Below the pieces are notes generated by a model. It was given only the letters and a program-made list of their open reading frames with translations. It did not search any database and was not told where the DNA came from. A stretch of DNA of 64,000 nt, taken from NCBI GenBank assembly GCA_946965045.2, contig OX337238.1:3286001-3350000 (forward strand), given 5' to 3'. Source of the stretch: Epithemia pelagica. Taxonomy: Eukaryota > Protista > Bacillariophyta. Within the stretch, counting starts at the first letter, position 1; every line of letters starts with the position of its first letter. The translations under genes and the position numbers were made by a program. Positions 4,926 through 53,296 of the stretch are shown piece by piece.

Positions 4926-4969
4926 GGCGGACATCCCTCCAATGTTCCATTGCCCTTTTACCGCTCAGA

Positions 4970-7900
4970 TTGGAGATCTCTTTTTCTTTACATATTTGTT
5001 GGATGGTTACTTGGATGATGTCCCTTTGGTTGTCGATGTCGGCTGCTTCGTGTTTTGGTTTTGACTCTTTACCGGTTTACTGTTTCCCTTTTACTTGGCC
5101 GTGTGTATACTCTTTCTGCTCGCGCTTTTACGTTTTCTTCAAGATTCCATGGTGGCAATTTCAATGGTCCTTCGGTCGTCTCAGTTGTCGGTTATCGCGC
5201 TCTCACGTATTCGGTTCCTTCTTCTGGCTCTGGTATCTCTTCTGTGGCGTCTTCGATTCTACGTTGATTGTTGGTTGTCACGCTTTGCGACTTGGTCGGC
5301 ACTCCTCTCCCTTACTGGTTCATTTGGATAAACTTGACTCGGACTCGCTTTTACCCACTCGCTTCCCTCCCAGTGGTTTTGATTCGCGTCTTGGTTTGGG
5401 TGCTCATGTTGTCAACTTGACCTCTTTGTCTCGGCTGATTCTCCACCACCGACTGACTGTGTTTGGAGCTGCTGCAGATCCGCTCCGTACTCCGTTTCTA
5501 CCTACACGGCTCTGGGGCGAGAATTTTGGTCGACGACGACGCAGACGATTCCAGCCATCGACTGCCCTCTACCTTAGCTACCTCAAGGGACTCGATGATG
5601 ACAGTATTTCCAACCTAGTCTTGATGGCGTTCCTAACACCTGTTGACGATTGTTGCTTTTGGGATCCTGTGTTATGGGACAAGTTTTCGGACGGACTGGG
5701 ATTCGAGCTCGAACCACCTTTGCACACGTTGTCACCTCTTTGGACACCAACTTACGATATCTCACCCATCTTAGACTACTGGTACGACTCTACCTTCGTA
5801 CGACACCAAGCTGCACACGACCGTCACGCTAACGATCTTCGACTCGGAGAACTGGGACACGACTTTAGTAACTTGCTGCGTTGCTCGAGCGAGACTGTGC
5901 GACAAACTTGTCATCATGCTGCCTTCCGATTCGATCCTACCGTCTTTGTCAACACGAACAAAGACCAGACACGTAAAGAAGACCCTTTACTTTCAGTGAT
6001 CTTGGACACAGGAGCTTCACACGGGCTGACCATGAGTGCCGAAGACTTTATTGAACTTACATATGGTAACTTCGGGTCAATGTCAACTGCAGCGTCAAAC
6101 AACCAGTTTCCTATCATTGGATCTGGTATCGTCGCATACGACGCAATAAGCGAAAACGGAGAAATTCAACGATGGACTTACCCGGCCAATCTCTGTCAAG
6201 CGGCCGGAACTCGACTCTGCTCTCCTCAAGTCTGCGCTGACTACCTGAATCTAGATCGACGATATCCCAGTTTTGAAAGCAACCATGTTTTTGCCAGTCT
6301 CCAAACAAGTTCCAAAACTGATCGCCTTACCGTACCAATCGATCATGAAACAAATCTCCCGATCGTGAAGGTCAAGCATCACCGTCCTGAAAAACACACG
6401 AGGAAACGGCCTTCGCACTGTCGATGTGGTTCGACTCGATGGTGTCGATGCGTCTCAGCTGAGTCCATGAGTGTACCATCTCAAACAATTAGTCAGATGC
6501 TGAACGCACACCCAATTCCAGACTTGATGACTGACGAAAATCGAAATTTATCCAAGGCACAATGGCAATTGCTTCTGGATCATCAACGACTGGGTCACAT
6601 CGGAATGCGACATGTACAACGACTTTATTCTCCTCTCGGGTCCGGTGCACCGACTACACACAACGAAAATGGTGACTCATGTCTGTTACCACGTTTCCAA
6701 TCGTCCACCAGCTGCGAGATTCCCAAATGTGAAGCATGTCTTTTAGCTAAGGCTCGACGTCGTCCCACACGCGCAACAACAAAAGTTCCAAACAAGCAGT
6801 GTCGACCGATACCTCCCACAACGGACTTGAAACCAGGGGATCTCGTCTCCATCGATCATTTCGAATCCTCGGTACGCGGTAGATTGTTGCATACACGCGG
6901 GCGAGAATTGCCACAACATCGATATTGCGGTGGAAGTCTGTTCTATGACCACGCATCTCAGGCCATCTTCACATACCCCCAGGTCTCATTAGCCAGTAGC
7001 GATACCATTCACTCGAAAGAGTCCTTTGAAGATCTCGTCCGGCAGTTGGGCCACTCAGTTCGTCACTACCACACTGACAATGGTGTCTTTACGTCGGACG
7101 CTTTCCGTCAGTCACTCAGTCAAGATCGCAACCAGCACCGCCCTTTGCACACTCGATCCGGTACAGGCGCCCACCATCAAAATGGGAATGCCGAGCGAGG
7201 CATTCAAACCGTCACCCACATGGCCCGAACGATGATGCTGCACTGTCATCTCCGTTGGCCTGAAGCCTTTTGTCCGACACTTTGGCCTATGGCTCTTTCC
7301 TACGCCACGTGGATCTACAATCATGTCCCTTCCGACGCAACGACCTTATCACCGATGGAACGCTTCACCGGAAGCAAGATGAACTGTGAGTATCTCCGAC
7401 GACTGCGAGTGTGGGGTTGTCCGGCGTATGTGCTTCACGCTCGTCTCCAAGATGGGAAGAAGCTGCCCAAATGGAATTCCCGAGCTAAACGCGGACAGTT
7501 TCTTGGTTTTTCGCCGTCTCATTCGACCACGATCGGACTCATCCGCAACTTGGAAACGAACAACATCACTCCACAATTTCATGTGGCATACGACGAACAG
7601 TTCCACACTGTGGCTAGCTCGTGGACACCGCCGCCGACCGACTCTCCGTTGCCCGACCTTTTCACTCGTGATTTCTACTTGGACGGCTATGACGAAACGC
7701 TCGACGGCCCTTTGCCCGAGCTTGACTCGGAATGGTCTCTCGACGACGAACCATCTGCTCCTGCTTCGAGGCCACCTCCGATCCGTCCTGATGTTCCTTC
7801 GATTCCCACCATGCCGGAGGGCGAGAACGCACCACCCGCTTCTCCGTCCAGTCCACACTTACCGCACTTCCCACCTGTGAGCACTCCTGCCCGCGAACTT

Positions 7901-9930
7901 TCCCAAGAACCGGGCGAGCCACCGTTGGACGTCCCTCTTGCACCAGACTTCGAAGAACCGGGCGAGCCACCTTTGGAGCCATCTGTCGACCAACCGGGCG
8001 AGCCACCGTTGCATCCACCCGCTGACGAACCGGGCGAGCCACTGTTGGACCAATCTCCCGTTCGTCCACGTCGTCAACGCCATGCTCCACGCCGTTTCCC
8101 CGACCCTGATCGACACGTACGTTTCCAACTGCCACCAACTGAAAGCCAATGGGCCAACACAACGCGAAGCTTGAACCACTCTCCGCACTGTCTTGGATTC
8201 CACATGAACCAACTCGACTGGACAGTGCCTCCAGATCCTACCTCTGACACTGTGGCAGCTCATTTCGAACAGGTGTATCACCGACAAGCAACAAGTACTC
8301 TCGGGTTGATTGATGAGTGGGACCCCCGTTTTCTCGCGGCCAAAGCCTTCGACGCCGACACACCCTCAGTCTTTGAAGTCCGTCACATGTGCGAAGAGGA
8401 ACGAACCAAGTGGTACATCGCTATGGACAAAGAACTCAACGAACTCGAAGCGAAAGGAACCTTCCGTCTGGTCCCACGTTCCAAGGCAGCCGGCAAAGAA
8501 ATCGTCGATACCATGTGGACGCTTAAACGCAAACGTCTTCCTGACGGCACCATCTCACGTTACAAAGCGAGACTTGTCGTCCGCGGTGACCAACAAAAGG
8601 CAACATTCGACAAGGAGGACACTTTCGCACCAGTCATCGACTGGCCAGCCGTCAGACTCATGCTCATCCTCTCACTCCAACATAACCTTACCACAGTCTC
8701 TATCGACTTCAAAAATGCCTTCGTTCAGTCCAGCTTGCCGGAACCCATCTTCGTGAACCTACCAAAAGGATACGGCGGAGGCCACACAGACCAAATCCTC
8801 GAAGTAACCAAGAGCCTATATGGCGACTGCAGAGCCCCACGGCTCTGGTATGACCATCTCAAGGCCCAACTATCGAAGCTCGGACTGAAACCCGACGGGT
8901 CCGACCCATGCCTGTTCTGTAAAGAAAACGTGGTGTTAGTCACGTATGTCGACGACGCCATCATCTGCGGCACGGACCAAGACGCTGTCAATGAGATTTT
9001 GAACGGACTTAAGAAGTTAGATATGGACTTCGATCATCTCGGCGACTTACCCACTTACCTGGGTGTGCAAATTACCCGCCATGAGGATGGCAGCATGGAG
9101 TTGAAACAACCTCACTTGACCGAAAGCATCATTGCAGCGCTGGGACTGACCGACAGTCGGGCAAAGGGAACACCAGCCTCTCGCACAATCGGTAAGGAGA
9201 CAGACAAGCCACCTCTTGACGAAGGGTTCAACTACCGCTCCGTGGTGGGCATGTTATTATACTTGGGCAATAACACACGCCCAGATTGCGCCTTCGCTAT
9301 ACACCAAGCGGCACGCTTCAGTAATAACCCTCGCCAACCCCACGGCGAAGCCCTGAAACGAATTGGCCGCTATCTACAAGGCACCCAAGACAAAGGCCTC
9401 ATCTTGCATCCATCAAAGGACATGACGTTGAATTGTTACGTGGATGCGGACTTCGCTGGAATCTGGGGCAACGAAGACCCTCATGACTCAACATCCGTGC
9501 GTTCACGCACCGGATTTATCATCACACTCGGAGACTCACCGGTGACATGGTCCAGCAAGCTTCAGACTGAAATAGCACTTTCAACGATGGAAGCGGAATA
9601 CATTGCCGCAAGCACAAGCATGAGAACCCTGTTACCATTGCGACGACAACTCTTAAAACTCACCTCTTTCCTTCAACTGCAATCGCCCGACACATCCATC
9701 GTAACAACCAAGCCGCCCTGAATCTCTCCACCAAAGATCCACCTCGCATGACACCGCGGTCCAAACATATCGCAATCAAATATCACTGGTTTAGAGAGAA
9801 ACTATCACCAGGCAAACATGGAATCAAGATGCGCCCAATCGCCACAGACGATCAACTTGGCGATTGTTTCACGAAACCCCTCGAACTCGGACCTTTCGAA
9901 ACCGCACGGAAGAAGATCCTCGGCTGGTAA
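4970..9930 (+). CDS. pol: Pol polyprotein of Copia element 1 (PR-IN-RT-RNase H), frameshifted in RNase H near 9704
   Basis: PR ILDTGAS; HQRLGH/CEAC zinc motif; IN SIDHF, YHTDNGVF, HQNGNAER; RT YKARLVVRGD, IDFKNAF, YVDD; RH YVDADFAG, EAEY. The frame stops at 9721 but RNase H continues in another frame (NQAALNL...RSKHIAIKYHWFRE...QLGDCFTKPL) to 9930. Confidence 0.92.
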
Positions 9931-9942
9931 CTTGGCTCCGTC

Positions 9943-9951
9943 GAGGGCGAG
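9943..9951 (+). promoter_or_regulatory. Polypurine tract of Copia element 1
   Basis: GAGGGCGAG directly upstream of the 3' LTR. Confidence 0.65.
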
Positions 9952-10217
9952 TGTCACGGTACGACAAAGAACCGCCTCCTTTCATTCCAATCCAACTCAC
10001 CAAAATTTATCGCACCAAGAAATCGACCTCACCAAATCACCTTAGTTTAGCAAACATAACTTTCAGAACAACAAAATTTACATACAACACAATGATTCAC
10101 CTTTACACGCACCTCGACAATGGCGTACGGAACATTCGGAAATTTGGAATGCCACAGCGCCAAATTGCCAAAATTCACTCCCCATCGGAACGTTCCAAAA
10201 ACTCTCTAACAACGACA
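9952..10217 (+). repeat. 3' LTR of Copia element 1
   Basis: Identical to 2866-3131 and followed by TSD GCACG. Confidence 0.97.
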
Positions 10218-10347
10218 GCACGACTGCAATCACGAATCGAAGGTTGCGAGCACGGCTGAACGATGGGCCGGCGCCCATGACAGAAACGCGACCACTCAAG
10301 GACAGACCGATTATCGATTATATTATAGACCCCTAATGCCCTTCATC

Positions 10348-13300
10348 TATAGGTATCAAGTTTCATCGCCGAAGTTTCTCCGCCTAAACTTCGGCACCTA
10401 AGTTTCTCCGAAGTTTCATGACGCTGCTTTGGCCTTACCTAAGTTTCGGGTGGCCCTTTAAATATTTAGCCTATGTATTGAATCCTGTCTGTGAACGTTG
10501 GTGTCAACGTCCATATCTTCCGAGTGGTCTTTCGTGTGGATGTCCATTCTGCCAACCAAACATGATCTGCCGTCTCGAATCGACAGGAACCATGTACCAT
10601 GTACCCGCCTCCATCTTCATCCAACAACCAAACAAAAGTCGTGATTGCTGCTGTGGTGATCACTGACGAGCATTGATAACCATCATGGACAACCTTACGG
10701 AGGTTGAGCAGGACGTTGGTACCTCCCCGTCATTTGCCAATATATCTCCATTGACAGACGACCAACAGCAGATGTTGGAGGCGCAGACGAACCAAAACGA
10801 TGTCAACGAGGTGGTTGCAGAGGATGTCGAAGAAGTGGCAGAAGTGCAAGTGCTGGTGGGAGCAAAGCGAAAGGTCAATCCTCCCAAAAAGAAGGCCAAT
10901 CAACTTGTCCGAGATCAATTCAAGATCGGGCCAGACCCCAACCGACAGGGGTATCTGGCCGTTGTATGCGTGCATTGTAAAGAGTTCCGATCCTGGAAAA
11001 CATTCAACGCGAGTGTTGCCTCCAACCACATTATCCACAAGTGTCGTAAAGTTCCTGCAACCATCAAAGACAGTTGTGAAGACGCGACACAAGCTTCAAA
11101 GCGGGCCAAGAAGCAACTCGGGTTGATTGTTGGTGGTCCATTGAGTCAAGAGTCGTCGGCTTCTGTCAGCAACAGCAGTGGCAGTGGTGAGAATGTTGTC
11201 AGCAATGGTAGTAGTTCCCGTAAGGCTCCATCCACCATCACCACCACCAAGAAACAGTCTTCGTCACAGCAATCATCCATGCTGCAGTTTGGCCACATTG
11301 TCAACGAAGTGACTGCAAACAAGGCAATCACAAAGTCCGTCGAAACGATGCTGGCACGTTTCGAACCACTCAACAGGGTTAGTGACCCATTCTTCCAGGA
11401 CGAGATGGTGTCACGTTGGGGAAAGGCTATTCTTCGACACCTTCCCAACCATCACGATACTGTATACAAGCGATTTGTTCTCCCCATTGATAGAAACTGT
11501 CGTGAGGAGCTGAAGCAAATGTTGCACAAGATTCAGGGTGGACTTACCATTGCTGCTGACGGTGTGACAGCAAATGGTACGAGTACCATTCTGTACACAG
11601 TCTCCAAGGGTCCAGTCACTATGTTTTGTAGAGCCACGAGACTTCGAAACGAAGCACATGTGGCTGATGCAGAGGTGGAGGACATGGTGGATTTTATGGA
11701 GACAGCACGTCGCGACTTTGATACATCAGTGGTTTGTGTTGCTTGTGACAACGCAGCCAACAATATTGTTAAAGGAGCATGTGAGAAGTACAGAGAACGC
11801 AACAAATCAGAACCTAGTATTCTCCATAACCGAGACTGTGCACACTGCATTGACCTGGTGGCCAAAGATCTGGCAAAGGTTCCATGCATTGAGTCAGTCC
11901 TGACCGATGCTCAGTTACTCATGGAGTTTTCCACAACAGACAACATCGATGGCATCCGGCACGAGCTTGTGCGAACTGGAGAGCTCCCTCGGTCTTGTGG
12001 TCATGTGACCAATTACTCCGACACCAGATTCAACAAAGTCGGCATGACACTCATGTCTATAACCAAACAGAGGCAGTTCTACGAGTGGTGCTGTAACAAT
12101 CCACCTATGTTCATGCAGTACTACAATACGAGGAACAAGAAGCGTCAGGAGAAGCTTGATGCTGCTCTCCGATTGGTCAATCGCGATTTCTGGGCGAAGC
12201 TTCATGTCCTAACTCAACTATTCCAAGTCATTGAACATGGAACGAAGCTGGTATCAAGTGAGAAATTCCCACTGTCAGCATACTACCCACTGGTTGTGGC
12301 AATGAGGAACGAGATTCACCAAGTCATGAAGAACAGTAGTGGAACACGATCTTTTGATTCTCTGTTTGCAGTGCCTGGGGCAAAAGAATCAATTTTCGAC
12401 AGTATTGATGTCCGCTTCAACTTCGCTGGTGTCCAACCCAATGGAAGGAAAGTTGGGCTACTTGACAAGTACCATGTGTGGGCGTATATTGTTGACCCAT
12501 TCCGCCCAATGATCCCATTCCGTCCGTTGCTTCCCTCCCTTGCTCGTTCTGTCCGAGAAGCAATCGACTTCTTTGTCCACGAGGATGGCTCAGCAACTCC
12601 AACAAACTCAGCAACTCCTCCTCCAGCTCCAGGTCCACCTCAATACAACCCAAACTATGACTATGGGGATGAAGATATTGCTGAGGTCCAACAAGCAATC
12701 CGTGAAATTGAGCGAGAATTGGAACCATCACAGAGCAACAAGACTGTTGTCGACAGGGAGCTTCGGTCGTACCTAGGTCGTTCTGGAGACTGGATTGACC
12801 TGTTCCACAAAGAAAAGGCACGGCCATCTATGGACAAGAATGCAGAAGAGTGTCAGCTGACCATTGAAATGGTTGCCAAATGGCTCGAAGACACGGGATG
12901 GTATCAAGGACGGATGGAGTTCTTCAGCATAGCACCGTCCACAAAGGTGTTTCCATTGCTGATTGAACCACTCCTATCTGTCAGGGCAACAGGGTCAATT
13001 TGTGTCGAGAGAGTTGCTAAACCTCTGAAAAATAATATTTGGAATAAACTTCGTGCATCGCTTGGCCAGGACAAGGCTGAGGTTTGCCTCAGGGTTGGGC
13101 TCAACCTACGGTATCTGCTGAACGTGCGGTCAACTATCCGCCAAGCAACCCATGAGCAATACCTTGATTGTGATCTCTTTGGATCTGTGTAAGTCAATCA
13201 ATGGTTTACCTTTGATATAGACGAGGACCTGTTGTGTTGTTGGTCTTTATTACGTCTTACGAAAAAATGAGGGAAGGAGCCGTATTTCATAGCTACCTAA

Positions 13301-13386
13301 ACTACCTAAACTTCAAAACCTAAGTTTCACCTAAACTTCTTTAGAAACTACACTAAAAATCTGAGTACCTAAGTTTGATAGCTATA
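10348..13386 (+). mobile_element. hAT-superfamily DNA transposon 1 (apparently autonomous)
   Basis: 8-bp TSD CCTTCATC (10340-10347 and 13387-13394); imperfect TIRs TATAGGTATCAAGTTT / TATAGCTATCAAACTT; subterminal CCTAAGTTT/CCTAAACT repeats at both ends; single transposase ORF. Confidence 0.93.
10685..13192 (+). CDS. hAT transposase
   Basis: BED-like finger (CVHC...HIIHKC), D1 TIAADG, D2 ACDNAAN, CxxH (DCAHCIDL), DTRF, catalytic E in SICVERV; uninterrupted ORF. Confidence 0.9.
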   Translation: MDNLTEVEQDVGTSPSFANISPLTDDQQQMLEAQTNQNDVNEVVAEDVEEVAEVQVLVGAKRKVNPPKKKANQLVRDQFKIGPDPNRQGYLAVVCVHCKEFRSWKTFNASVASNHIIHKCRKVPATIKDSCEDATQASKRAKKQLGLIVGGPLSQESSASVSNSSGSGENVVSNGSSSRKAPSTITTTKKQSSSQQSSMLQFGHIVNEVTANKAITKSVETMLARFEPLNRVSDPFFQDEMVSRWGKAILRHLPNHHDTVYKRFVLPIDRNCREELKQMLHKIQGGLTIAADGVTANGTSTILYTVSKGPVTMFCRATRLRNEAHVADAEVEDMVDFMETARRDFDTSVVCVACDNAANNIVKGACEKYRERNKSEPSILHNRDCAHCIDLVAKDLAKVPCIESVLTDAQLLMEFSTTDNIDGIRHELVRTGELPRSCGHVTNYSDTRFNKVGMTLMSITKQRQFYEWCCNNPPMFMQYYNTRNKKRQEKLDAALRLVNRDFWAKLHVLTQLFQVIEHGTKLVSSEKFPLSAYYPLVVAMRNEIHQVMKNSSGTRSFDSLFAVPGAKESIFDSIDVRFNFAGVQPNGRKVGLLDKYHVWAYIVDPFRPMIPFRPLLPSLARSVREAIDFFVHEDGSATPTNSATPPPAPGPPQYNPNYDYGDEDIAEVQQAIREIERELEPSQSNKTVVDRELRSYLGRSGDWIDLFHKEKARPSMDKNAEECQLTIEMVAKWLEDTGWYQGRMEFFSIAPSTKVFPLLIEPLLSVRATGSICVERVAKPLKNNIWNKLRASLGQDKAEVCLRVGLNLRYLLNVRSTIRQATHEQYLDCDLFGSV

Positions 13387-13847
13387 CCTTCATCCACTGT
13401 TTAGTCCTCGCCTTGGTAGTCTGGTTAGACTATTTTTGGCCCGGCGCGTCGGTCGACGTCTCCCTGCGGGGAGCGTGCGGCAGCGTTAAAATAGATATTT
13501 CCCTTTATTTTTGATTATATTATAGACATGCGAGAATTGGCAATCCAGTCCGTGATTGAGTGGAGAATGGGAAACGACGGGACCTTGAGAGGACACGTCC
13601 TCCTTTGTTGAATGTTGTGTGGCGTGTAACGAGCCATGGAAATTCAGGAGTGAGCCGTTCGACGCAGTTGGATCAACTTCATTTCGACTCTTGTGGTGGT
13701 TGGTTCCCCATCCAATTTGTTCAAGAAATCGTGTCAGGCAGTGCCGATGGCCTTGGTGCGTCATTGGTCCACTTTGTGCGTCATACAATCATGACTGGCA
13801 AGCTCGAACAAGTGTTTCAGCAACAGAGACCATATGTCTACCAATCA

Positions 13848-15011
13848 TTAGTCTATTGTGTCCATGTACGAAATAGACTGGCGTTGGAGTGACTGGATTT
13901 GTGGAACAGAGCAATCCAACAATCGTTGGAACAAGAAGGACTCCTTGTCGACGAATGCAAGTCGTTTGTACCAAAGGCACCCATGACGGTGAAGGTCAGT
14001 GTCGTCCGAATCGTCCAAAATAATCTTTCCCTTGGAATTGGTGAAAACGCGTGTCATAGCACAAGGCGAGAAAGGGTCCCACGAATCGGATTGGTATTCA
14101 AATTTCCATGAAATGTTTCGCTTCGTATCCAGAACCTCAACAAAACGATCCGCAAACAACAAACAGTGTCCAACTCGGACCACATCTGAACTTGTAATGT
14201 TCCCAAGATTCCGATCCCCGTGAACGATCCATGTCATGGTGGAGGTCGATAAAGTCTCTTTCGACTGGACATAAGTAGTATTCAAACCGGGTGGATCAAA
14301 ATCCAGATATTCCACGGAATGACCAAGAACCGTCGAACCTTTACATTCCCCACCAACGACGTAGACACGATTCTGCACAACCTCCATCCCGAAGGAATGT
14401 CGCGCATAATTGAGATCGGGTCCAGGAAAGGACACGGATGAATGAGGGGAATGTGTATCAATGATTTCCACCGAAGCAATGGGGTCTTGTTGGTGAGTTA
14501 TTCCACCGGCCACAACAATAAACCAGTCTTGGACTGAGACAGCTTTGGCGAGCACTCGCGGTATGCCAAGACAGCACGGAAACGGTTTCCATGTCTTGTC
14601 GTCTTCGTTGTCAGTTGAGGTCCTTGGCTCCAACAAATCCTGGATTGATACTCTTTTGATCGTTTTTAACGGCTTGCCATCAGAATTTATTCCACCAATC
14701 ACATAGATATGGTCACCAGCCACCACACTTGTCAAGTATGTTCTTGCTTCGGGCATAGAGGGCCCTTTGCTCCAGCGTTTGGTTTCAACATGCCAAACAT
14801 CCACACAAGTCACGGCCGAGCGTCCTTCGCGGCCTCCCAATACTACAATCGTCGGTTCTTGGGTCTTGTCAGGATGACGAACGGTAACCAAGGAACAACC
14901 AGTTCTTTTATGTTCCAACGGTGAGCTTGGTCGTCGCAGTCCAATGTCGTTATCGTTGTCATTCAAGAACACGAGTCCTGACAAACGCGCTTCTTCCTGC
15001 AGCCAGCTCAT
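13848..15011 (-). CDS. Kelch-repeat protein
   Basis: 387-aa intact ORF, MSWLQEEARLSGLVFL, Kelch GG motifs, C-terminal DKESFLFQRLLDCSVPQIQSL. Confidence 0.88.
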   Translation of the reverse strand: MSWLQEEARLSGLVFLNDNDNDIGLRRPSSPLEHKRTGCSLVTVRHPDKTQEPTIVVLGGREGRSAVTCVDVWHVETKRWSKGPSMPEARTYLTSVVAGDHIYVIGGINSDGKPLKTIKRVSIQDLLEPRTSTDNEDDKTWKPFPCCLGIPRVLAKAVSVQDWFIVVAGGITHQQDPIASVEIIDTHSPHSSVSFPGPDLNYARHSFGMEVVQNRVYVVGGECKGSTVLGHSVEYLDFDPPGLNTTYVQSKETLSTSTMTWIVHGDRNLGNITSSDVVRVGHCLLFADRFVEVLDTKRNISWKFEYQSDSWDPFSPCAMTRVFTNSKGKIILDDSDDTDLHRHGCLWYKRLAFVDKESFLFQRLLDCSVPQIQSLQRQSISYMDTID

Positions 15012-45622: not shown

Positions 45623-46721
45623 GGTCTCTTGCTTCTTGCTTCTCGGTTCTTCTTCTTCGCTGTGTCGTTTCTCAAAGACACGCCAAATCTTTTGCAACGT
45701 CTCTTTTTCTCGTAGAGTGCGACAAGTTTCAAACGAGAAGTCGGTAGATGCAATTTGCTATGGTTGGATCTATGAGGGTGGCTGAACGGTGATAGAGATT
45801 TTCAGTTCGCAATTCGGATCGTCGATCTCACATTGATGGTAACCCTCTTTCTCTATAGAGCCAAACAGTACTACCAAAACCATTTGGTTGTTTTGTCTGC
45901 GCCTCGGACAGCCGTTGTGGGGGATGAGAGAAAAAGGCCCAACCACGGAGAGAATGCATTCGTTGCGGCAACTGCAAACTGCAGTTGATAAGTAGTATGG
46001 CGAACAAAGTACTAAGAGAATGGGGGAAGGCCCAAGACGAATGCTTGGGGGGATGCCCCCAAATGAAAGACAGGAAAGTCTGGACCGCCCCCAACGAAAA
46101 AATCCGGTTTCTAGCCATTCGGGGGCAGGGTGTGGAAGTCACTAGCGAAAAATTTTTTAAGTTCTGCAACTTTTGAACTTTTTCACCATAATTTCACAAA
46201 TCAAATCACATTACTAGCCTTTCCCAAACGAACTTTTTGCACAAAGTCAAATCGCTCACATTTTTCATCGAACTTGACTTGGACCCATCCAACTTAGTTA
46301 TTTACAAGCTCTTATTACCGGAACATTGGCACACACCAATGTAATTATCCAAGTTGCAATTTTCTCACATAGTTCAATCAAGTTACATGTCTCCACTTAG
46401 TGACTCGAAGTCTGAAGTCTAATTGCAAGTCTCAAGATTAGAACTAAATTCTCCAAATCAAGTTGAAATTTTACTTCATTGCAACTAGTGTCAGTGTCGA
46501 CTGTCGACACTTGGTCACTTGGCACCATCCTACAGTAACAAACACAGTCAACAAGATATAATCGGTACTGGCCCCTTACCTCTTACCTCTTAACACTGAA
46601 CCCAACACACAATCTCTTCACCTCTGTTGTGGCTTGTTGCAGCGTTACAGCACACGAATGAGGTGTGATTTTTCCAGTTGACACTGTCGGAATCAAACAA
46701 CCAATCTCTGGTTGAAAGCAC

Positions 46722-49700
46722 ATGTCTTTGTTGCCAATCGAGGACATTGAAGTAGATTTGAACTCCCCTGCTGTTTCCAGTCTTTCATCAGCGACATTCA
46801 TGTATGCCATGGCTCCCCAAGGAAAGAATCAACAGCAGTCATCTCAATCCTCCAAAGAAGCTCGACTATCGTCAGCAACTGGAGGTGACGACAACAATGA
46901 AGAACCCACGAACCCACCGACAACAACCAATGAAAGAGAAAATGAAAACCAGGCGCCTCCTACAACAGCCAACAATGAAGACAACTCTCAACAAGTTGCT
47001 GCTCCTGCTCCTACGGACGAGGGACCCTTGACACAAAGCCGAAAGGATGAAATCAAACAAGAGAAATCACATGTCTCGTTTTGTCCACCTCCGAAGAAGC
47101 TCTTTCGAAATTTCGAAAATTCGTTCTTTGGAAAAGTTCGTTACCTGAACTTCAAGAAATTGACCAGCACAAAGAAGACCTTAAAATCAAACCCCGCTGT
47201 CAATTTGGGGAAAATGCCAGGTTTATTTTCGTGTCTGCAATTGTTAGAGTCAGCTTCTGATGAAGACAAAGAAATGAACGATGGCTATCATTCCATTGTA
47301 AAGAAGCTTGTTGTTTGTCCACATTGCTTCGACGACCCGACTGTTAGTCTCGACAAATGTCTCCTTGGTCTTGGCAGAGGCCTTTTGTCCAACATCAGCA
47401 CACACTTCGGTAAATACCACCCCGAAGTCGTGGAAGATACTGCCTCTGTTGCAACCGACCCTACTCAACAACCCATTTCCATGTATTCTGGCACAATGGT
47501 TAGCAAACAAGATGCCAGAGTAATGTTTCATCACTTTGTTTCATCAGTCAATTTATAAGTTCGTGAATGACTGTGGTTTCCCGGTATCAACTGTTGAGAA
47601 GGAATCGTTTAGAGATCTTCTTAAGTGTGCAATTGCCAACGCCCCAAAGCTCAAGGAAAAGGACTGTTCCATAAGCAACAAAGCAATCACTCGGATGAGA
47701 TTGGAGTCCTACAATGATTTTCTCAAGACCGTTACGGAACTTGGAGAAAACGTACGACAAGCGTACCATGATCTCTGCAACAAACCCATCGCCTTCTCTA
47801 CGATAACACACGACATCTGGCAGGGAAATGACAAGGATGTCCTTGGGGTTTGTTTGATGTTCACCGATCCTCGGAACTGTAAATCTTACAGACTCCCGAT
47901 TGGCCTTTGCTCAACAAAGGGCCATACAGCAAAACAAGTAGCCGACCACACCTCATCAATCCTCAACGCTGTCGGCTTTACGCAACAAGACCTCTCTGCC
48001 TCCGTGAATGACAACACGAACTCCGCCGTGTTGGCTGGAAAGTATATAGTGGGTAATAAGACAGGCGGCAAGTGCAACATGCACAGGGCCAAACTGATCT
48101 TGAAACACTCCACAGGTCTGGCAGTCCGGAAAAAAAAGGCAAAGTGGTGGACAGTAACGAGGAATTCATGACTGTTTATAGAAAATTCTTCAAATTTGCA
48201 GCATGGATGGTGAGTTCGCGTGCCAAAAGATTTGAAAAGCTACGTTCCTACGCCCTAAAACATGGGAGGAAGGTCATCAAAGTCTCTATGCCGAATACAA
48301 CCCGTGTTGGAGGCTGCATCATTACCTTTCATGACCTATTCCGGAACAAATTTGTAACGGATATGTATGCAAAAGAGAAATTTGAGTACAAGGACGACGA
48401 ATTCATTAAACATTATCCGCTCTTGGCCGAATTCGAGGGAATCTTGGCCCCACTCAAACAAGTCTCCATGTCACTCCAAGTTGACGACCCTTCTGCATCG
48501 GCTTGTTCATTGCTGGAAATCTTCACCAGTAAGCATTGTGTGGAAGTTATGAAAGATAAGGGAGTGCCCGTGTTGACTGTTACTGGGCCTAATGCACGCC
48601 CATGGGATACCAGTCTCACCATCGCTAAGCTTCAATCGTATCGAGACATTGTAACATACGACAAATTGTCAGAAAAGAGTCAATTGTTGATCGAGCGAGT
48701 ACTTGTGGAATATACAAACTACATTCAGGAAGGCCATGACTCCCACGCTGAACACGCCATGTGTGGACATCCTTTCCTTGCATCTTATGGTCCCAACATA
48801 CTGAAAACCATAAAGGTTTACGACGATGAGAGTCTTAAACGGATTCGGAAAGAATTTGTGATGGACATTGTCCGCAAGTTCTCGCAGCCAAAGAAGAATG
48901 GCACCAATCCCCAGTCCAAGTCGAGTCAGCAGGAACGTGAACAACAAAAGGAAAGTACACCTGTGGAGATCATCGAGGACGAAGAGGAAGAGTCTTCAGT
49001 CCCAAAAGCTGTCTCGAATGTAATGGACTGCTTTAACATCTTCAAGACACATCGCATCACCAAGGAGAAAGAAAATGCTGCACTGATGGAGGCGACGGCG
49101 ACAAGTACAAGTACAGATGACCAAGTTGATAGAGCCAAGCTATACAAGATGTGTGATGAACAGTTCGGACGCTATCTCGAATTCTACGAGAACGTTGTTC
49201 ATGGATCCTGGGAGGACTTGATTCGCCAGTATCCCACTGCCGCATTTCTGAAACTATCTGGTTCGTGGAACCCTGAAAAACGACAAGAATTCCAGTTGGC
49301 CTGTACGGAACACTATTTCCATGTCGTTGGGAAATATTTTGACGTCTTGAAATGGTGGTCCGACAACAAGATGCTATTCCCCAAACTCTTTCCTAGTGCC
49401 TTGATTTGGATATCGAAACCTGCGACAAACGCATTCCAGAAACGCGTGTTCTCTCGGTCGTCGTTCATGGATAGAAATCCCTTAATGAGACGCCAACTAG
49501 ACAAGAACTTTGAAATGCGCACTATGGAAAGTATTACAAGGGAGGTGCGCTCTGAGATTGTCAAGAATGAAAAGCTACTCAAACAAGGCGCGACCTCCGA
49601 CAAAAAAAAGGCAGCCAGTGGCCGCCAAGCAAGGAAGGTGATAGATCTCAGCCAGGAATCTAAAGGGGAAGAAGTCAGTCAGGTACAACAGACCGCACAA

Positions 49701-50381
49701 CAACGCACCCCGGCAGCAGGAACACAAGTTCCTGTTGTCCCACTGGAAAAAGCCACACCAACACAATCCGATATGACTCGGATGGAAACGGTACTACGAG
49801 CAACGTCGAAGCTGGAACTATACGAACTGTCCGGAACTATTGGTGCCCACGGCATAACGGCAGAAACAAGTTACAAGTTCAAGTCGGTCAAAAAGGTTGA
49901 TAAGAAGACAGTTGTGAGCGATGCGACATGGGACGACGTCGAATTGGTTGATCTGGTAGACGATCCACGAGATGAAGACCAACTAGAGGCTTTGGATCGA
50001 AAAGTTGTTGCTCCTTACGACAATGACGAAGACAAGGAAGATTCCGACACGGCGTTAAAAGAAGCCATCCAGGAAAGAAAGAATGAACTCATTCAACAAA
50101 CCGCGTTGGAGAAGACTGTTGCTAGTCTGCCCGTTGCAAAAGCCAATGAAGGCACGAAAGGAGATAGTGGGAAACGTAAAGCCTCTTCAACTATTCAAAA
50201 AGGAAGGAAACGGACGAAACAGAATTCACTCTCTGAGGCACTCGCAAGAACTGTGGTTAGAACACCACGCAAGAAAGACAATCGCAAACCACCCCCAGCC
50301 CCAAACGACTCGCCAACGAGAAGAAGCTCAAGACTTGCAGAGAAGGAAGTCTCAAGTGCAGACAATGACGGTACCAGTTGA
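46722..50381 (+). pseudogene. hAT transposase, disrupted (frameshifts near 47540 and 48130-48137; ERxFS glutamate reads K)
   Basis: BED-like finger (CLQL...CPHC...THFGKYH), D1 ITHDIW, D2 VNDNT, CNMH (CxxH), NTTRV, dimerisation region WWSDNK..FPKL...PATNAFQKRVFS, spread over three overlapping ORFs. Confidence 0.88.
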
Positions 50382-50483
50382 TCTCCGACCACGAACGTCA
50401 CTGAAGGTGACAATGGAAGAAACGTCACGGAAACTTTACATCCATAATCGCAGTGCATTTTGGTAAATACAATATATTGACAG

Positions 50484-52325
50484 TCATTTAGTATATTCTT
50501 TTATCAACTGCAGAAAGAAATACTTGAGATGGCGAAGATTCGCTGGAGATTTAGATTCGGATTGGTCATGAGAGTGAGCCACAATAAAAGACTCCATTTG
50601 TTCTTGGCACTTACTTCTGGTCTGTGATTTGTTAAGTAGTTGTCCTAGAGAACCAAATAAAGGATTGATCTCCTCCCATTGTTCTTTAGGAAGCCATGAT
50701 TGAAGGTTCAAAGAGCATTCCATGCCGTCATTGATATGAGATTCCGTCCAATTGAGAACCTTAGTTGATCAGATAACATGAATATCTGAGGGAATTCCTT
50801 CCGTCCGGCCAAATGCCGTTTGTAGAATGATTGTTCCCGTCTTGTGGCCAATTCCAGGTAAGGTCATAAGCTCAGTAAGGGAAATGTCTTTAGGAATGCG
50901 ACCTTTGTGTCGCTGGACGAAATAGTCCGCGGCGTTGACTATGCGTTCCGCATTGACACGATACCGTCCTGTTTCTGCAAACAAACTACAGAAAACATCC
51001 ATCCCAAAATATGTAGACACTTCAATTGTTCCTTGTGCACTAGTGATGCCCGATTGGAATAAGCAAGGGATCACTTGAGAGAGACTTTGATCTGATGTGG
51101 CCGAGCTCATCAAGATAACAATGAGACACATGAAGGCTGGGTCAGAGTCTTCATATTCCGACATATTGTTGGTAATCCATTCGGACCATGTGTCTCTGGG
51201 GGCTTCCAAACCAGACTGAAGGAAATACCGACGTAAATGGGAAAGATTATCAAGTAAAAACAGCCGGGAATCAATTGTGGATTGGTTTCTAATGGGGATG
51301 GAAGGGCGAAACATTCTGGTCATGACAGGTTTGGTAATTGCAGGTGTCCCAGGCATGTGTCTGTCGCCATAGACTATCTGTTCCTTGGTGGCACATGATT
51401 GCAATAAAGCATGGCAGAGAACAGTTTTTCTTTGCCGAGTCAAGACATGGGCAGTGGGGGAAAATTGTCTCTTGGTCCAATATTCATCAATGACAGGAGA
51501 AGAAGCCCAATATTCATGGGTGACAGAAGTAGAAGCGTTGTTGCTATTTGGGCCCATGGTAGATTGAGAAGCTTTGGCAACTGGAGTTGATGGAGGACTT
51601 GTATCAATAGGAGGAGGGGACGTCGTTGTATCCAGTTTCATTGAGTAAGGGTCATCCTCCTTCGTGCTCTTCTTAGTATGCGCAACAATGTCCTCAACAA
51701 CGATGTCGATGCTTGGACTAATACAAATAGGACACTCTGTCCGTAGGTCAAAGGAATTTCTAACCTGGATTCTGGCATTGTGTCGGGTCATCCAGGTTAG
51801 AAGATTCCATTCCACGGAAAGTTTAGTGTAGTTGTTTTGCTGATGGTAATCGGCATTGAATTTTTGAAAAGCTCTGAGACCATTGGAGCAAGGCAAAGAA
51901 AATATTGGTCGGCATTTTCCTTCAATGGAGATGAAGGGGAGGTCGTCGGTGGGGGGGTTCATCTCGTATGTGACTTGGAATGAGTCATCTTCTTGGGAAT
52001 ACAGACCCGTAAACACTATTCGACAGACAGTGTTCAGTAAGCTTTCGAATGACATGCGACTTGGAGATAAACAAGGGTGGCTTGTGTTGGATGGATAGTC
52101 GACTTGTTGGAAGTGCAGACTTCCATTGTACCGGGTAAGCCACAGCAACACCACATCTTTTATGTTCTCCATTGCCAAGTCTTGTGTCGCCTTTTCCAAG
52201 GGAGTGGTTAACAAAGTTGAGTCCTCTAGCATCATGGTCATGAACGACATTGGAATATGGGTCACAGTGATGACTTGGTGACAAGTCACATCGAGGTTGA
52301 TTGTACGGTCATCTGATGCTTCCAT
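50484..52325 (-). pseudogene. Endonuclease III/NTH1-like HhH-GPD DNA glycosylase with ~370-aa unknown N-terminal region; one in-frame TGA at 50769-50771
   Basis: FMCLIVILMSSATSD, HhH motif LMTLPGIGHKTG (catalytic Lys position), IPSDIHVI (catalytic Asp). Continues in frame past the TGA as STKVLNW...LQSWLPKEQWEEINPLFGSLGQL, typical of eukaryotic NTH1. No 4Fe-4S Cys motif. Confidence 0.88.
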
Positions 52326-53296
52326 TGTACTTGAATATTAGATGCATGGGGTTGGGGATGGGGAAATAATAGTGGCAATGAGAAATGAGAAGGGCGGGAA
52401 AACTGAAGGTTGTGTCGTTGATGGAAAGGAACAGAGGTAAAGGTGACAGGTGACAGTGGATTGGTGAATGTTGAGAGGTTGAGAGTTGTGAGTGTTGGTT
52501 GAACCTCTGTCATGAGTCGTGAACGTTCTACTCCTCTGGGAGTGATATTGGTAAATATGTGCAGGAAGAGTGTGAATAAATACGTAGAAACAGATAAGAG
52601 TGAATGGTTCCTCTGAATAAAAGTTGTTGTTTGTGACTACGACAACAAAGAAGTTGCAACTAATAGTTGTAACTATGGAGGTGACAGAGGGATGAAGTTT
52701 AATTACAAGGGGCAAAGTTGCAACTTGGACTTGTTTAGTCTAGTTGCAGACTCAGAAAATAAACTACGACTTTCAAAGTTAGTCTAAGTTAAGTTGCAGG
52801 TTCTTCATTGGAACCATATTTAATCTAGTCAAGTTAGTACCTTAGTCGTGTTAGACTATTAGTTGCAAGTTCATTCTGTATCATGGTTTTGTGATTTGAT
52901 TAGTTTAAGTTAAGTAAATCATACATGTTGAACTAACTAGTGGGTACAAGTCGCATGACAGTAAACTGTCTAATGAATTATTAGTTGGGAAGTTAAGTCT
53001 AATGGCTGATTTTCCAACTTCCACACCCTGTTCGGGGGGCTATCCATTCGGGGGATGGAGCAAGCGCGAGAGGTGTGTAAATTCCTAGTGCTACTAAGGT
53101 TACATGAACCCTTTAGCCAGAACTGTATGGACTCTATCTAAAATATAAAAAAACAATCCAAGTACCGGAGGATATAGGCAATCCTCACAAGCTCCAGGAA
53201 ACAAGGATTTGGGATCTAATACGACTGGCTTTCCGCATTGGAGTTACTCCACATCATGTCATGCCAATGCCACTGGCCAATCTCCTCTTTGGGCAT

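What the first reader, a model, noticed from the sequence alone, without database searches (positions are those of the whole stretch)
46126..53030. hAT transposon carrying its own NTH1-like DNA glycosylase: candidate anti-silencing or self-repair module
Perfect 14-bp TIRs and an 8-bp TSD enclose both the transposase (+) and a convergent ~613-codon gene (-). Its C-terminal part is an HhH-GPD glycosylase/AP-lyase with the catalytic Lys (LPGIGHKT) and Asp (PSDIHV) positions but no 4Fe-4S motif. hAT elements normally encode only transposase, and this is a whole gene with its own upstream region, not a fragment. It is established that the HhH-GPD superfamily includes the 5mC-excising DEMETER/ROS1 enzymes and the G:T-repairing MBD4, that diatoms methylate transposons, and that some plant transposons encode anti-silencing proteins. 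My inference is that the cargo may remove methylated, deaminated or oxidised bases from the element, or process hairpin or gap intermediates after excision. I know of no described hAT-NTH association but could not search.
Basis: partly seen in the sequence, partly recalled or inferred. Interest (0 to 1): 0.9.

Follow-up and report, generated by a model that had tools for sequence, protein, structure and literature searches.

The report
Dead copy of glycosylase-carrying hAT transposon
This is a decayed copy of an old, diversified family of cut-and-paste (hAT) jumping genes that always carry, beside the transposase, their own endonuclease III-like DNA base-excision enzyme; I found no description of such a cargo, and it may let the element counter DNA-methylation silencing.

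Summary
Window 46126-53030 is a hAT element with perfect 14-bp TIRs and an 8-bp TSD. It encloses a transposase gene (+) and a convergent 613-codon gene (-) whose C-terminal half is an NTH-like HhH-GPD domain with the Lys/Asp dyad and no 4Fe-4S motif.

This copy is dead. The glycosylase has a CGA>TGA stop at invariant R519. The transposase has two frameshifts and a Glu>Lys change at the catalytic DDE glutamate.

The pairing is not a one-off capture. Nine diverged lineages in the same assembly (glycosylases 30-54% identical) and three environmental contigs all show TIR, glycosylase ORF, short spacer, convergent ~1,200-aa hAT transposase ORF, TIR. Where both ends are held, 8-bp TSDs flank them.

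The two genes give largely congruent trees. Lys and Asp are invariant. The glycosylase domain is a separate clade among 1.84 billion proteins, next to other clusterless NTH-like proteins. The N-terminal 225 residues are an internally duplicated domain with no detectable fold relative.

Function is untested. CpG depletion and a CpG>TpG mutation signature show methylation pressure on the elements, so an anti-silencing or anti-deamination role is the best guess (about 40%).

The scan had already found this family on other pieces of this genome. I found no published description.

The parts
46118..46125 (.). Left copy of the 8-bp target-site duplication, TTCGGGGG
   Evidence: Read directly; identical to 53031-53038.
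46126..46139 (+). Left terminal inverted repeat, CAGGGTGTGGAAGT
   Evidence: (pair I10). The same 14-mer ends elements in L001, L002 and L003.
46140..46721 (+). Subterminal region upstream of the transposase gene, rich in AAGTTG(C) repeats
   Evidence: AAGTTG, AGTTGC and GTTGCA are 10-19 times enriched in the terminal 450 bp of each end compared with the interior. Pairs I5 and I11 lie here.
46722..50381 (+). hAT transposase gene, broken: ORF pieces 46722-47558, 47536-48171 and 48072-50381
   Evidence: Dimer_Tnp_hAT match. A BED-like CPHC...H...H motif lies in piece 1, and HDIW and NDNT (the two DDE aspartates) lie in piece 2. Frameshifts relative to the majority of copies and to P0228: a 13-nt insertion at about 47524 and a 1-nt deletion at about 48129.
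49440..49442 (+). AAA (Lys) codon in place of the invariant catalytic Glu of the DDE triad (motif NAFQ-E-RVFS)
   Evidence: the window has NAFQKRVFS, while L001, P0228 and P0227 have NAFQERVFS. This Glu (E918) is invariant in 12 transposases. It aligns to the SERTFS motif of Hermes transposase.
50382..50483 (.). 102-bp spacer between the two convergent stop codons
   Evidence: The spacer is about 40-160 bp in all other elements.
50484..52325 (-). 613-codon glycosylase-like gene, made a pseudogene by one nonsense codon
   Evidence: 98% identical to the intact 613-aa P0001. Domain layout from the AlphaFold model: N-domain residues 1-225 (51651-52325), disordered linker, then HhH-GPD domain residues 297-613 (50487-51437).
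50769..50771 (-). Premature TGA at codon 519, which is Arg/CGA in intact copies: a CpG>TpG transition
   Evidence: element position 2260, T in the window against C in L001, context CTG against CCG.
50841..50843 (-). Lys495 codon in the helix-hairpin-helix motif LPGIGHKT; the expected Schiff-base nucleophile
   Evidence: Invariant in 22 family members. Aligns to the catalytic Lys motif LPGVGPKMA of human NTHL1.
50784..50786 (-). Asp514 codon in the motif IPSDIHV; the expected catalytic Asp
   Evidence: Invariant in 22 family members. Aligns to VDTHV of NTHL1.
52326..53016 (-). Upstream region of the glycosylase gene and right subterminal repeats
   Evidence: (I5, I11).
53017..53030 (-). Right terminal inverted repeat
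53031..53038 (.). Right copy of the 8-bp target-site duplication, TTCGGGGG
   Evidence: Read directly.

Best explanation
Shown: the window holds a non-functional copy of an autonomous hAT DNA transposon family whose conserved unit has two convergent intronless genes between CAGGG-type 14-bp TIRs. One is a ~1,200-1,300-aa BED/DDE hAT transposase. The other is a ~545-640-aa protein made of a family-specific, internally duplicated N-terminal domain, a disordered linker, and a clusterless endonuclease III/NTH-like HhH-GPD domain with an intact Lys/Asp dyad.

Shown: the glycosylase gene was acquired once, long ago. It came from a lineage of NTH-like proteins that already lacked the 4Fe-4S cluster. 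It has since co-diverged with the transposase under purifying selection.

Inferred: the protein is an active bifunctional glycosylase/AP-lyase that serves the element rather than the host.

Inferred, about 40%: it removes 5-methylcytosine, or a deaminated or oxidised derivative of it, from element DNA and so counters methylation-based silencing or CpG decay. The N-terminal domain would supply targeting, to element DNA or to the transposase.

This particular copy can at best be mobilised in trans.
For: Ends and architecture:
- TIR plus 8-bp TSD enclose both genes in the window and in L001, L002, L003 (inner and outer elements), L004, L006, L007, L008, L009 and L010.
- L008 and L009 are the same element at two loci. 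They have different TSDs and only 3 differences in 6,798 bp, which shows recent transposition.
- The same architecture occurs in two sediment-metagenome contigs and one Logan contig.

hAT identity:
- Dimer_Tnp_hAT matches in 12 of 12 transposases, and Hermes transposase is the best PDB hit.
- D361, D427 and E918, and C200, C203, H229 and H234, are invariant.
- Subterminal repeats are enriched.

Glycosylase:
- Pfam HhH-GPD match.
- Human NTHL1 and EndoIII are the best matches by sequence (E=3e-17) and by fold.
- K495 and D514 are invariant, and there is no FeS motif.

Not a recent capture:
- The domain HMM gives 292-361 bits within the family and at most 112 bits outside it.
- The family is monophyletic with SH-aLRT 100 and a stem length of 0.74.
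- The nearest outsiders also lack the cluster.

Co-divergence: the two gene trees are congruent except for one long branch, and pairwise identities correlate at r=0.68.

Selection: dS is saturated between lineages while dN is 0.28-0.46 in the catalytic domain.

Methylation pressure:
- CpG o/e is 0.69-0.78 in ten of the eleven elements and 0.87 in the L003 outer element, against 0.85-0.97 in flanks.
- 11 of 40 window-specific changes are CpG>TpG/CpA, including the stop codon itself.

Precedent for transposons carrying demethylation enzymes: TET/JBP genes in fungal DNA transposons, including hAT (PMC12730594).
Against: - There is no expression evidence. The only runs found are DNA or Hi-C.
- There is no biochemical evidence.
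- The nearest characterised relatives act on oxidised pyrimidines, not on 5mC. ROS1/DME structures were not among the top 50 fold matches.
- The elements are CpG-depleted and this copy decayed by CpG transitions, so any protection is incomplete.
- CpG depletion shows no pattern by region within the element.
- I could not check whether every related transposase lineage carries the gene. The transposase cluster P0244, with 205 members, was not examined.
- dN/dS could only be bounded, not estimated.
Confidence: 0.85

Rival explanations
1. The glycosylase assists the transposition reaction itself rather than countering silencing. For example, its AP-lyase/dRP-lyase or nicking activity might help repair the 8-nt gaps at new insertions or the broken donor site, or bias repair towards copying the element back. 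Alternatively it might act as a DNA-bending partner of the transposase at the subterminal repeats.
For: The pairing and the convergent arrangement with the transposase are strict in all 14 loci. The two genes co-diverge. The family-specific N-terminal domain could bind the transposase or the element ends. Weak fold hits (Z about 4-5) of residues 141-228 to small helical DNA-binding domains, including domains of the P-element and TnsB transposases, are only at background level.
Against: No other hAT element needs such a factor; Hermes and Ac transposases suffice, by established knowledge. Base excision has no obvious place in hAT chemistry, which uses hairpins on the flanking DNA and 3'-OH attack. 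The fold hits are below the tool's stated noise level.
Confidence: 0.2
2. It is an ordinary base-excision repair enzyme for oxidised pyrimidines that the element carries as a host-beneficial or neutral passenger, as in a Pack-type or transduplicated gene.
For: The closest characterised relatives are NTHL1 and EndoIII. The Lys/Asp dyad is that of bifunctional oxidised-base glycosylases (PMC13490550, title and abstract).
Against: It is not a recent copy of a host gene: the best outsider scores 112 bits against at least 292 within the family. It is retained intact across lineages that are only 30-54% identical, with saturated dS. It co-diverges with the transposase. It carries a large extra N-terminal domain found only in this family. 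A neutral passenger would have decayed.
Confidence: 0.15
3. The HhH-GPD domain has been exapted as a non-catalytic DNA-binding or chromatin-binding module, so glycosylase chemistry is irrelevant.
For: The iron-sulfur cluster is lost. A novel N-terminal domain and a disordered linker have been added. One nearby outsider is fused to a bromodomain (P0115), which hints at chromatin roles in this part of the superfamily.
Against: Lys495 and Asp514 are invariant, as are the surrounding motifs (G-x-G-x-K-T and P-x-D-x-H-V), in 22 sequences down to 28% identity. That is the pattern expected of a working active site.
Confidence: 0.07

Closest known systems
hAT superfamily transposons (Ac, hobo, Hermes)
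   Same: 8-bp TSD and short TIRs beginning CAGGG. Subterminal short repeats. BED-like C2H2 finger. DDE triad with the hAT C-terminal dimerisation region, and Hermes is the best PDB match.
   Different: The transposase is about twice the usual length, with long low-complexity N- and C-terminal tails. A conserved second gene for a DNA glycosylase is always present in convergent orientation.
Endonuclease III / NTH1 (NTHL1, Nth) bifunctional HhH-GPD glycosylases
   Same: Same fold and best sequence match. HhH motif with the nucleophilic Lys and the catalytic Asp at the aligned positions.
   Different: No 4Fe-4S cluster; helices replace that region. There is a ~300-residue N-terminal extension with a duplicated orphan domain. 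The family forms a separate clade on a long stem. It is encoded by a transposon.
Fungal DNA transposons that carry TET/JBP dioxygenase genes, including hAT7 (PMC12730594)
   Same: DNA transposons, some of them hAT, that carry a second gene for an enzyme acting on DNA bases and linked to removal of cytosine methylation.
   Different: The enzyme class differs: dioxygenase there, glycosylase/lyase here. The hosts are fungi. In the fungal PU type the cargo moved repeatedly between transposon superfamilies. Here a single acquisition co-diverged with one hAT lineage.
Plant DEMETER/ROS1 5-methylcytosine glycosylases
   Same: HhH-GPD superfamily, bifunctional with a Lys/Asp dyad (PMC3045615, abstract). 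This is the functional model for a glycosylase that reverses silencing.
   Different: DME/ROS1 keep the FeS cluster and have a discontinuous glycosylase domain and further conserved domains. They gave no sequence match at E<=1 and no match among the top 50 folds. They are host genes, not transposon genes.
Transposon-encoded anti-silencing factors of plants (VANC of VANDAL21; named from my own knowledge)
   Same: A second, element-specific protein kept by a DNA transposon, which in that case causes loss of methylation on its own family.
   Different: VANC is a non-enzymatic DNA-binding protein of a Mutator-like element. No homology was tested or is expected.

Membership tests
hAT superfamily | 8-bp target-site duplication | tested here: met
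   Window TSD is TTCGGGGG. Eight-bp TSDs flank 9 further elements. In L004 the TSD boundary is ambiguous by one base.
hAT superfamily | Short TIRs (about 10-25 bp) starting with CAG or TAG | tested here: met
   CAGGGTGTGGAAGT is perfect in the window. CAGGGT-type TIRs occur in all other elements.
hAT superfamily | DDE transposase with the hAT C-terminal dimerisation region | tested here: met
   PF05699 matches in 12 of 12 transposases. Hermes is the best PDB hit across the W-W...ER-FS block. D361, D427 and E918 are invariant. In the window copy the Glu is mutated to Lys and the ORF is frameshifted.
hAT superfamily | N-terminal BED-type zinc finger | tested here: inconclusive
   C200, C203, H229 and H234 are invariant in the alignment, and the window has CPHC...H....H. 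No Pfam BED model matched.
HhH-GPD superfamily | HhH-GPD fold with a helix-hairpin-helix motif and a catalytic Asp | tested here: met
   PF00730 scores 26.6 bits (P0001) and 32.3 bits (P0002) against a cut-off of 26.2; other members fall below the cut-off. Foldseek probability is 1.0 to NTHL1 and EndoIII. D514 is invariant.
Endonuclease III / NTH1 family | Nucleophilic Lys in the HhH motif (bifunctional glycosylase/AP-lyase) | tested here: met
   K495 is invariant and aligns to the NTHL1 motif LPGVGPKMA.
Endonuclease III / NTH1 family | C-terminal 4Fe-4S cluster (Cys-X6-Cys-X2-Cys-X5-Cys) | tested here: not met
   None of 25 family members has the motif, against 45 of 98 outsiders. The nearest outsiders lack it too. 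The protein is therefore NTH-like but not a canonical Nth/NTH1 member.
Endonuclease III / NTH1 family | Excision of oxidised pyrimidines with beta-elimination | not testable with these tools
   Needs an enzyme assay.
DEMETER/ROS1 5mC glycosylases | Discontinuous glycosylase domain, FeS cluster and the DME-specific C-terminal domain | tested here: not met
   No FeS motif. The domain is contiguous in the model. No DME/ROS1 entry appeared among PDB sequence hits at E<=1 or among the top 50 fold hits.
Pack-type or transduplicated host gene fragment | Recent copy or fragment of a host gene, present in one or a few copies and evolving neutrally | tested here: not met
   A full-length ORF is present in 9 lineages and 3 outside samples. 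A large score gap separates the family from all other proteins. dS is saturated while dN stays low.

The most novel reading that the evidence does not exclude
The second gene encodes a transposon-borne active DNA demethylase or anti-deamination enzyme. On this reading it is a clusterless NTH-derived glycosylase/lyase that its duplicated N-terminal domain directs to the element's own DNA. There it excises 5-methylcytosine or its deaminated or oxidised products, giving this hAT lineage a self-encoded escape from methylation silencing. That would be an origin of 5mC-directed HhH-GPD activity independent of plant DEMETER/ROS1.
Probability: 0.3. Interest if true: 0.9.

Novelty: new variant of a known kind. 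Interest (0 to 1): 0.75.

Why it matters
Cut-and-paste transposons are usually thought to need only a transposase. The few known extra genes are regulators, or in fungi TET/JBP dioxygenases.

A DNA glycosylase kept by one hAT lineage through deep divergence would be a new class of transposon accessory enzyme. If it acts on methylated or deaminated cytosine, three things follow:
- It would show that transposons can carry base-excision machinery to fight epigenetic silencing.
- It would provide a compact, naturally targeted, cluster-free glycosylase for study.
- It would open the question of active DNA demethylation in diatom-like algae to direct test.

The orphan, internally duplicated N-terminal domain is also a candidate new DNA-binding or protein-targeting module.

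Tried and rejected
- Scan of JGI metagenome contigs with the family alignment: 176 pattern matches, none confirmed.
- Profile search of the 5.8-billion-protein set with alignment A2, meant as a census: it returned only the 7 proteins already known.
- RNA evidence: no RNA run was found. X1 and X2 behave as genomic DNA and X3 as Hi-C, with GATC junctions, so expression could not be tested.
- dN/dS between lineages: synonymous sites are saturated, so only a qualitative bound was obtained.
- Fold of the N-terminal domain: Foldseek against PDB, AFDB clusters, VIA-align wide search (best Z 5.5, below the stated noise level), ESM Atlas by shape (TM at most 0.34) and by features (score 0.34) gave no credible relative.
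- Region-specific CpG retention (promoters against coding regions): no pattern.
- blastx of the convergent ORF fragments in L005 and L011 against the transposases: no hit. These fragments fall in the poorly conserved C-terminal tails.
- One-off capture from host NTH1: considered and rejected.
- The TIR-like 14-mers at 48534 and 62280 (2 mismatches each): treated as chance (expected 0.87 such matches). The 48534 site lies inside the transposase gene and recurs in L001.
- Host identity: a flanking GcpE gene shows only a plastid-bearing eukaryote.
Full report
**The observation.** The 14-mer CAGGGTGTGGAAGT lies at 46126-46139, and its exact reverse complement lies at 53017-53030. The eight bases outside each end are identical: TTCGGGGG at 46118-46125 and at 53031-53038. 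A perfect 14-mer on the opposite strand together with an 8/8 flank match is far beyond chance; no shuffle reached the observed count. Between the ends lie two genes. A + strand gene in three ORF pieces (46722-50381) matches Pfam Dimer_Tnp_hAT. A convergent - strand gene of 613 codons (52325 to 50484) carries LPGIGHKT and PSDIHV. The terminal 450 bp at each end are 10-19 times enriched in AAGTTG(C) repeats, as expected of hAT subterminal binding sites.

**State of this copy.** The glycosylase reading frame carries an in-frame TGA at 50771-50769. In intact relatives this codon is the near-invariant Arg519, CGA, so the stop arose by a CpG>TpG transition. The transposase is also broken. Collapsed contigs of the organism's own DNA runs, and the continuous family protein P0228, show that the window has a 13-nt insertion at about 47524 and a 1-nt deletion at about 48129. 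The codon at 49440-49442 is AAA (Lys), where all 12 aligned relatives have the catalytic Glu of the DDE triad. Both genes are therefore dead here. The ends are intact, so the copy could at most be moved in trans. The 1-nt deletion is shared with the copy in L001, which sits at a different site, so transposase-defective copies have probably been mobilised.

**Not a one-off.**
- A protein search found a 98%-identical intact 613-aa protein. Its 90% cluster has 17 distinct sequences, six of them full length. Three more clusters lie at 50, 39 and 33% identity, all from one ENA assembly.
- An exhaustive profile search of 1.84 billion representatives found 42 family representatives with E<1e-30, followed by a sharp drop to ordinary NTH-like proteins.
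- I fetched the genomic context of nine lineages: L001-L004, including a second outer element in L003, and L006-L010.
- Every one has the same layout: TIR, 400-700 bp, glycosylase ORF of 543-639 aa, a 40-160-bp spacer, a convergent transposase ORF of 1,173-1,316 aa, then TIR.
- Each has CAGGGT-type TIRs and an 8-bp TSD.
- L008 and L009 are the same element at two loci, with different TSDs and 3 differences in 6,798 bp, which shows very recent transposition.
- L003 shows one family member inserted into another.
- Outside this assembly, two sediment-metagenome contigs and one Logan contig carry the same pair. TIRs are present where the contig reaches them.
- Biofilm metagenomes hold 5-8% of the element's k-mers.

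**The transposase is a true hAT.** PF05699 matches in 12 of 12 transposases, and Hermes is the only meaningful PDB match. D361 (HDIW), D427 (NDNT), E918 (NAFQERVFS) and a C2H2 BED-like set are invariant.

**The second protein.**
- *Catalytic domain.* By sequence the C-terminal ~240 residues are closest to human NTHL1 (E=3e-17) and bacterial EndoIII. The AlphaFold model (pLDDT 78.6 overall, above 90 in the catalytic domain) matches the same structures best. Lys495 and Asp514 are invariant in 22 members whose identity to P0001 falls as low as 28%.
- *No iron-sulfur cluster.* None of 25 members has the 4Fe-4S cysteine motif.
- *A separate clade.* A domain-only HMM gives 292-361 bits to family members and at most 112 bits to anything else. 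In a tree with 98 outsiders the family is one clade, with SH-aLRT 100 and a stem length of 0.74.
- *Likely donor lineage.* Its neighbours (P0075, P0079, P0104, P0105, P0099, P0115, P0172, P0072) also keep Lys and Asp and lack the cluster. One of them is fused to a bromodomain. The donor was therefore probably an already clusterless NTH-like lineage, not canonical NTH1. That tree used a short search and these neighbours sit on long branches, so this point is tentative.
- *N-terminal domain.* Residues 1-225 fold confidently (pLDDT 84, pTM 0.71) into two similar alpha/beta modules. The two halves are homologous (hhalign probability 96.8%, E=2e-10), with a shared W-[LM]-x-R-x-x-x-x-I motif. No fold relative was found by five searches. 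Residues 221-295 are predicted to be disordered.

**History and selection.** Trees of glycosylase and transposase from the same nine elements agree on ((L001,L002),L003in), (L004,L006) and (L008,L010). Only the long-branched L007 moves. Pairwise identities correlate at r=0.68, and the mean divergences are alike, 33% against 36% identity. This pattern fits a single old acquisition followed by co-divergence. [quoted passage not shown] Between lineages, synonymous sites are saturated while dN is 0.28-0.46 in the catalytic domain. Intact ORFs persist in all lineages. Both are qualitative but strong signs of purifying selection. Within the window's own lineage the copies differ by 1.4%, which looks like ordinary post-insertion decay.

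**What it may do.** This part is inference. An invariant Lys/Asp dyad argues for a working bifunctional glycosylase/AP-lyase, and co-divergence argues that it benefits the element.

Two sequence signatures show that the elements live under cytosine-methylation pressure. First, CpG observed/expected is 0.69-0.78 in ten of the eleven elements and 0.87 in the L003 outer element, against 0.85-0.97 in their flanks. Second, 11 of the 40 listed differences between this copy and the majority sequence are CpG>TpG/CpA changes in this copy, against 2 in the opposite direction. One further CpG>TpG change, not among those 40, is the nonsense mutation that killed the glycosylase gene.

Cytosine methylation controls transposable elements in many eukaryotes and has been studied in diatoms (PMC9998398, abstract). 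HhH-GPD enzymes include the plant 5mC glycosylases (PMC3045615, abstract). Fungal DNA transposons, some of them hAT, carry TET/JBP genes (PMC12730594).

My ranking is:
- Removal of 5mC or its deaminated or oxidised products from element DNA, with the orphan N-terminal domain as the targeting part: about 40%.
- A direct role in transposition or gap repair: about 20%.
- Plain oxidised-base repair: about 15%.
- A non-catalytic role: about 7%.
- The remainder is unassigned.

**Known or new.** Four full-text searches found no paper describing a transposon-encoded HhH-GPD glycosylase. The library does not cover all journals or Repbase reports. The scan's own notes show that this family was already found and followed up several times on other pieces of this genome, with the same reading. 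I re-derived those claims independently here. I add:
- the defects of this copy;
- the catalytic Glu>Lys change;
- the internal duplication of the N-terminal domain;
- the clusterless sister group;
- the CpG mutation signature;
- the environmental contigs.

I class it as a new variant of a known kind: a hAT transposon with a new class of conserved accessory enzyme.

**Limits.** The host is a plastid-bearing eukaryote; 'diatom' was not verified here. I examined 14 loci, not the whole assembly. The large transposase cluster P0244, with 205 member sequences, was not checked for the glycosylase gene.

Noticed in passing
L003:301-14710: Nested insertion. An element with TIR CAGGGTGTGGAAGT (7467-14392, TSD AGTAGAAT) sits inside an older element of another lineage (TIR CAGGGTTGTGAAGT, TSD CTCATGAC). 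The outer element has its own 543-aa glycosylase gene and 1,283-aa transposase gene.
   Followed up: yes
P0115 (sister clade of the family's glycosylase domain): A 524-aa environmental protein fuses a bromodomain to a clusterless NTH-like HhH-GPD domain with Lys and Asp intact. This suggests chromatin-linked glycosylases in the lineage nearest to the transposon enzyme.
   Followed up: partly
P0244 (transposase cluster, 905 aa, 205 member sequences, same assembly): By far the largest related transposase cluster.
   Followed up: no
window 46100-46125 and 53031-53060: The target site contains CCATTCGGGGG twice, 16 bp apart. The TSD is the first TTCGGGGG of this short tandem.
   Followed up: no
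L004:3385-4976: A fragment of another hAT family member lies in the flank of the L004 element. It is 98-99% identical to residues 1-338 of transposase P0253, and a TIR-like ACTTCACAACCCTG lies at 4963-4976.
   Followed up: partly
window 48129 and L001 around 12200-12254: The window copy and the L001 copy share the same 1-nt frameshift in the transposase gene but sit at different sites with different TSDs. A transposase-defective element therefore seems to have been mobilised in trans.
   Followed up: partly
run X3 laid on window 47031-53030: Loose ends of contigs from run X3 begin with GATC, as in a Hi-C library. None of the three runs of the source organism behaves as RNA.
   Followed up: no
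L011:79-900: In the sediment-metagenome element the subterminal region is packed with CACTTA/AAGTGA-type repeats. These differ from the AAGTTGC repeats of the window's lineage, so the subterminal motifs diverge between lineages while the first bases of the TIR stay the same.
   Followed up: partly
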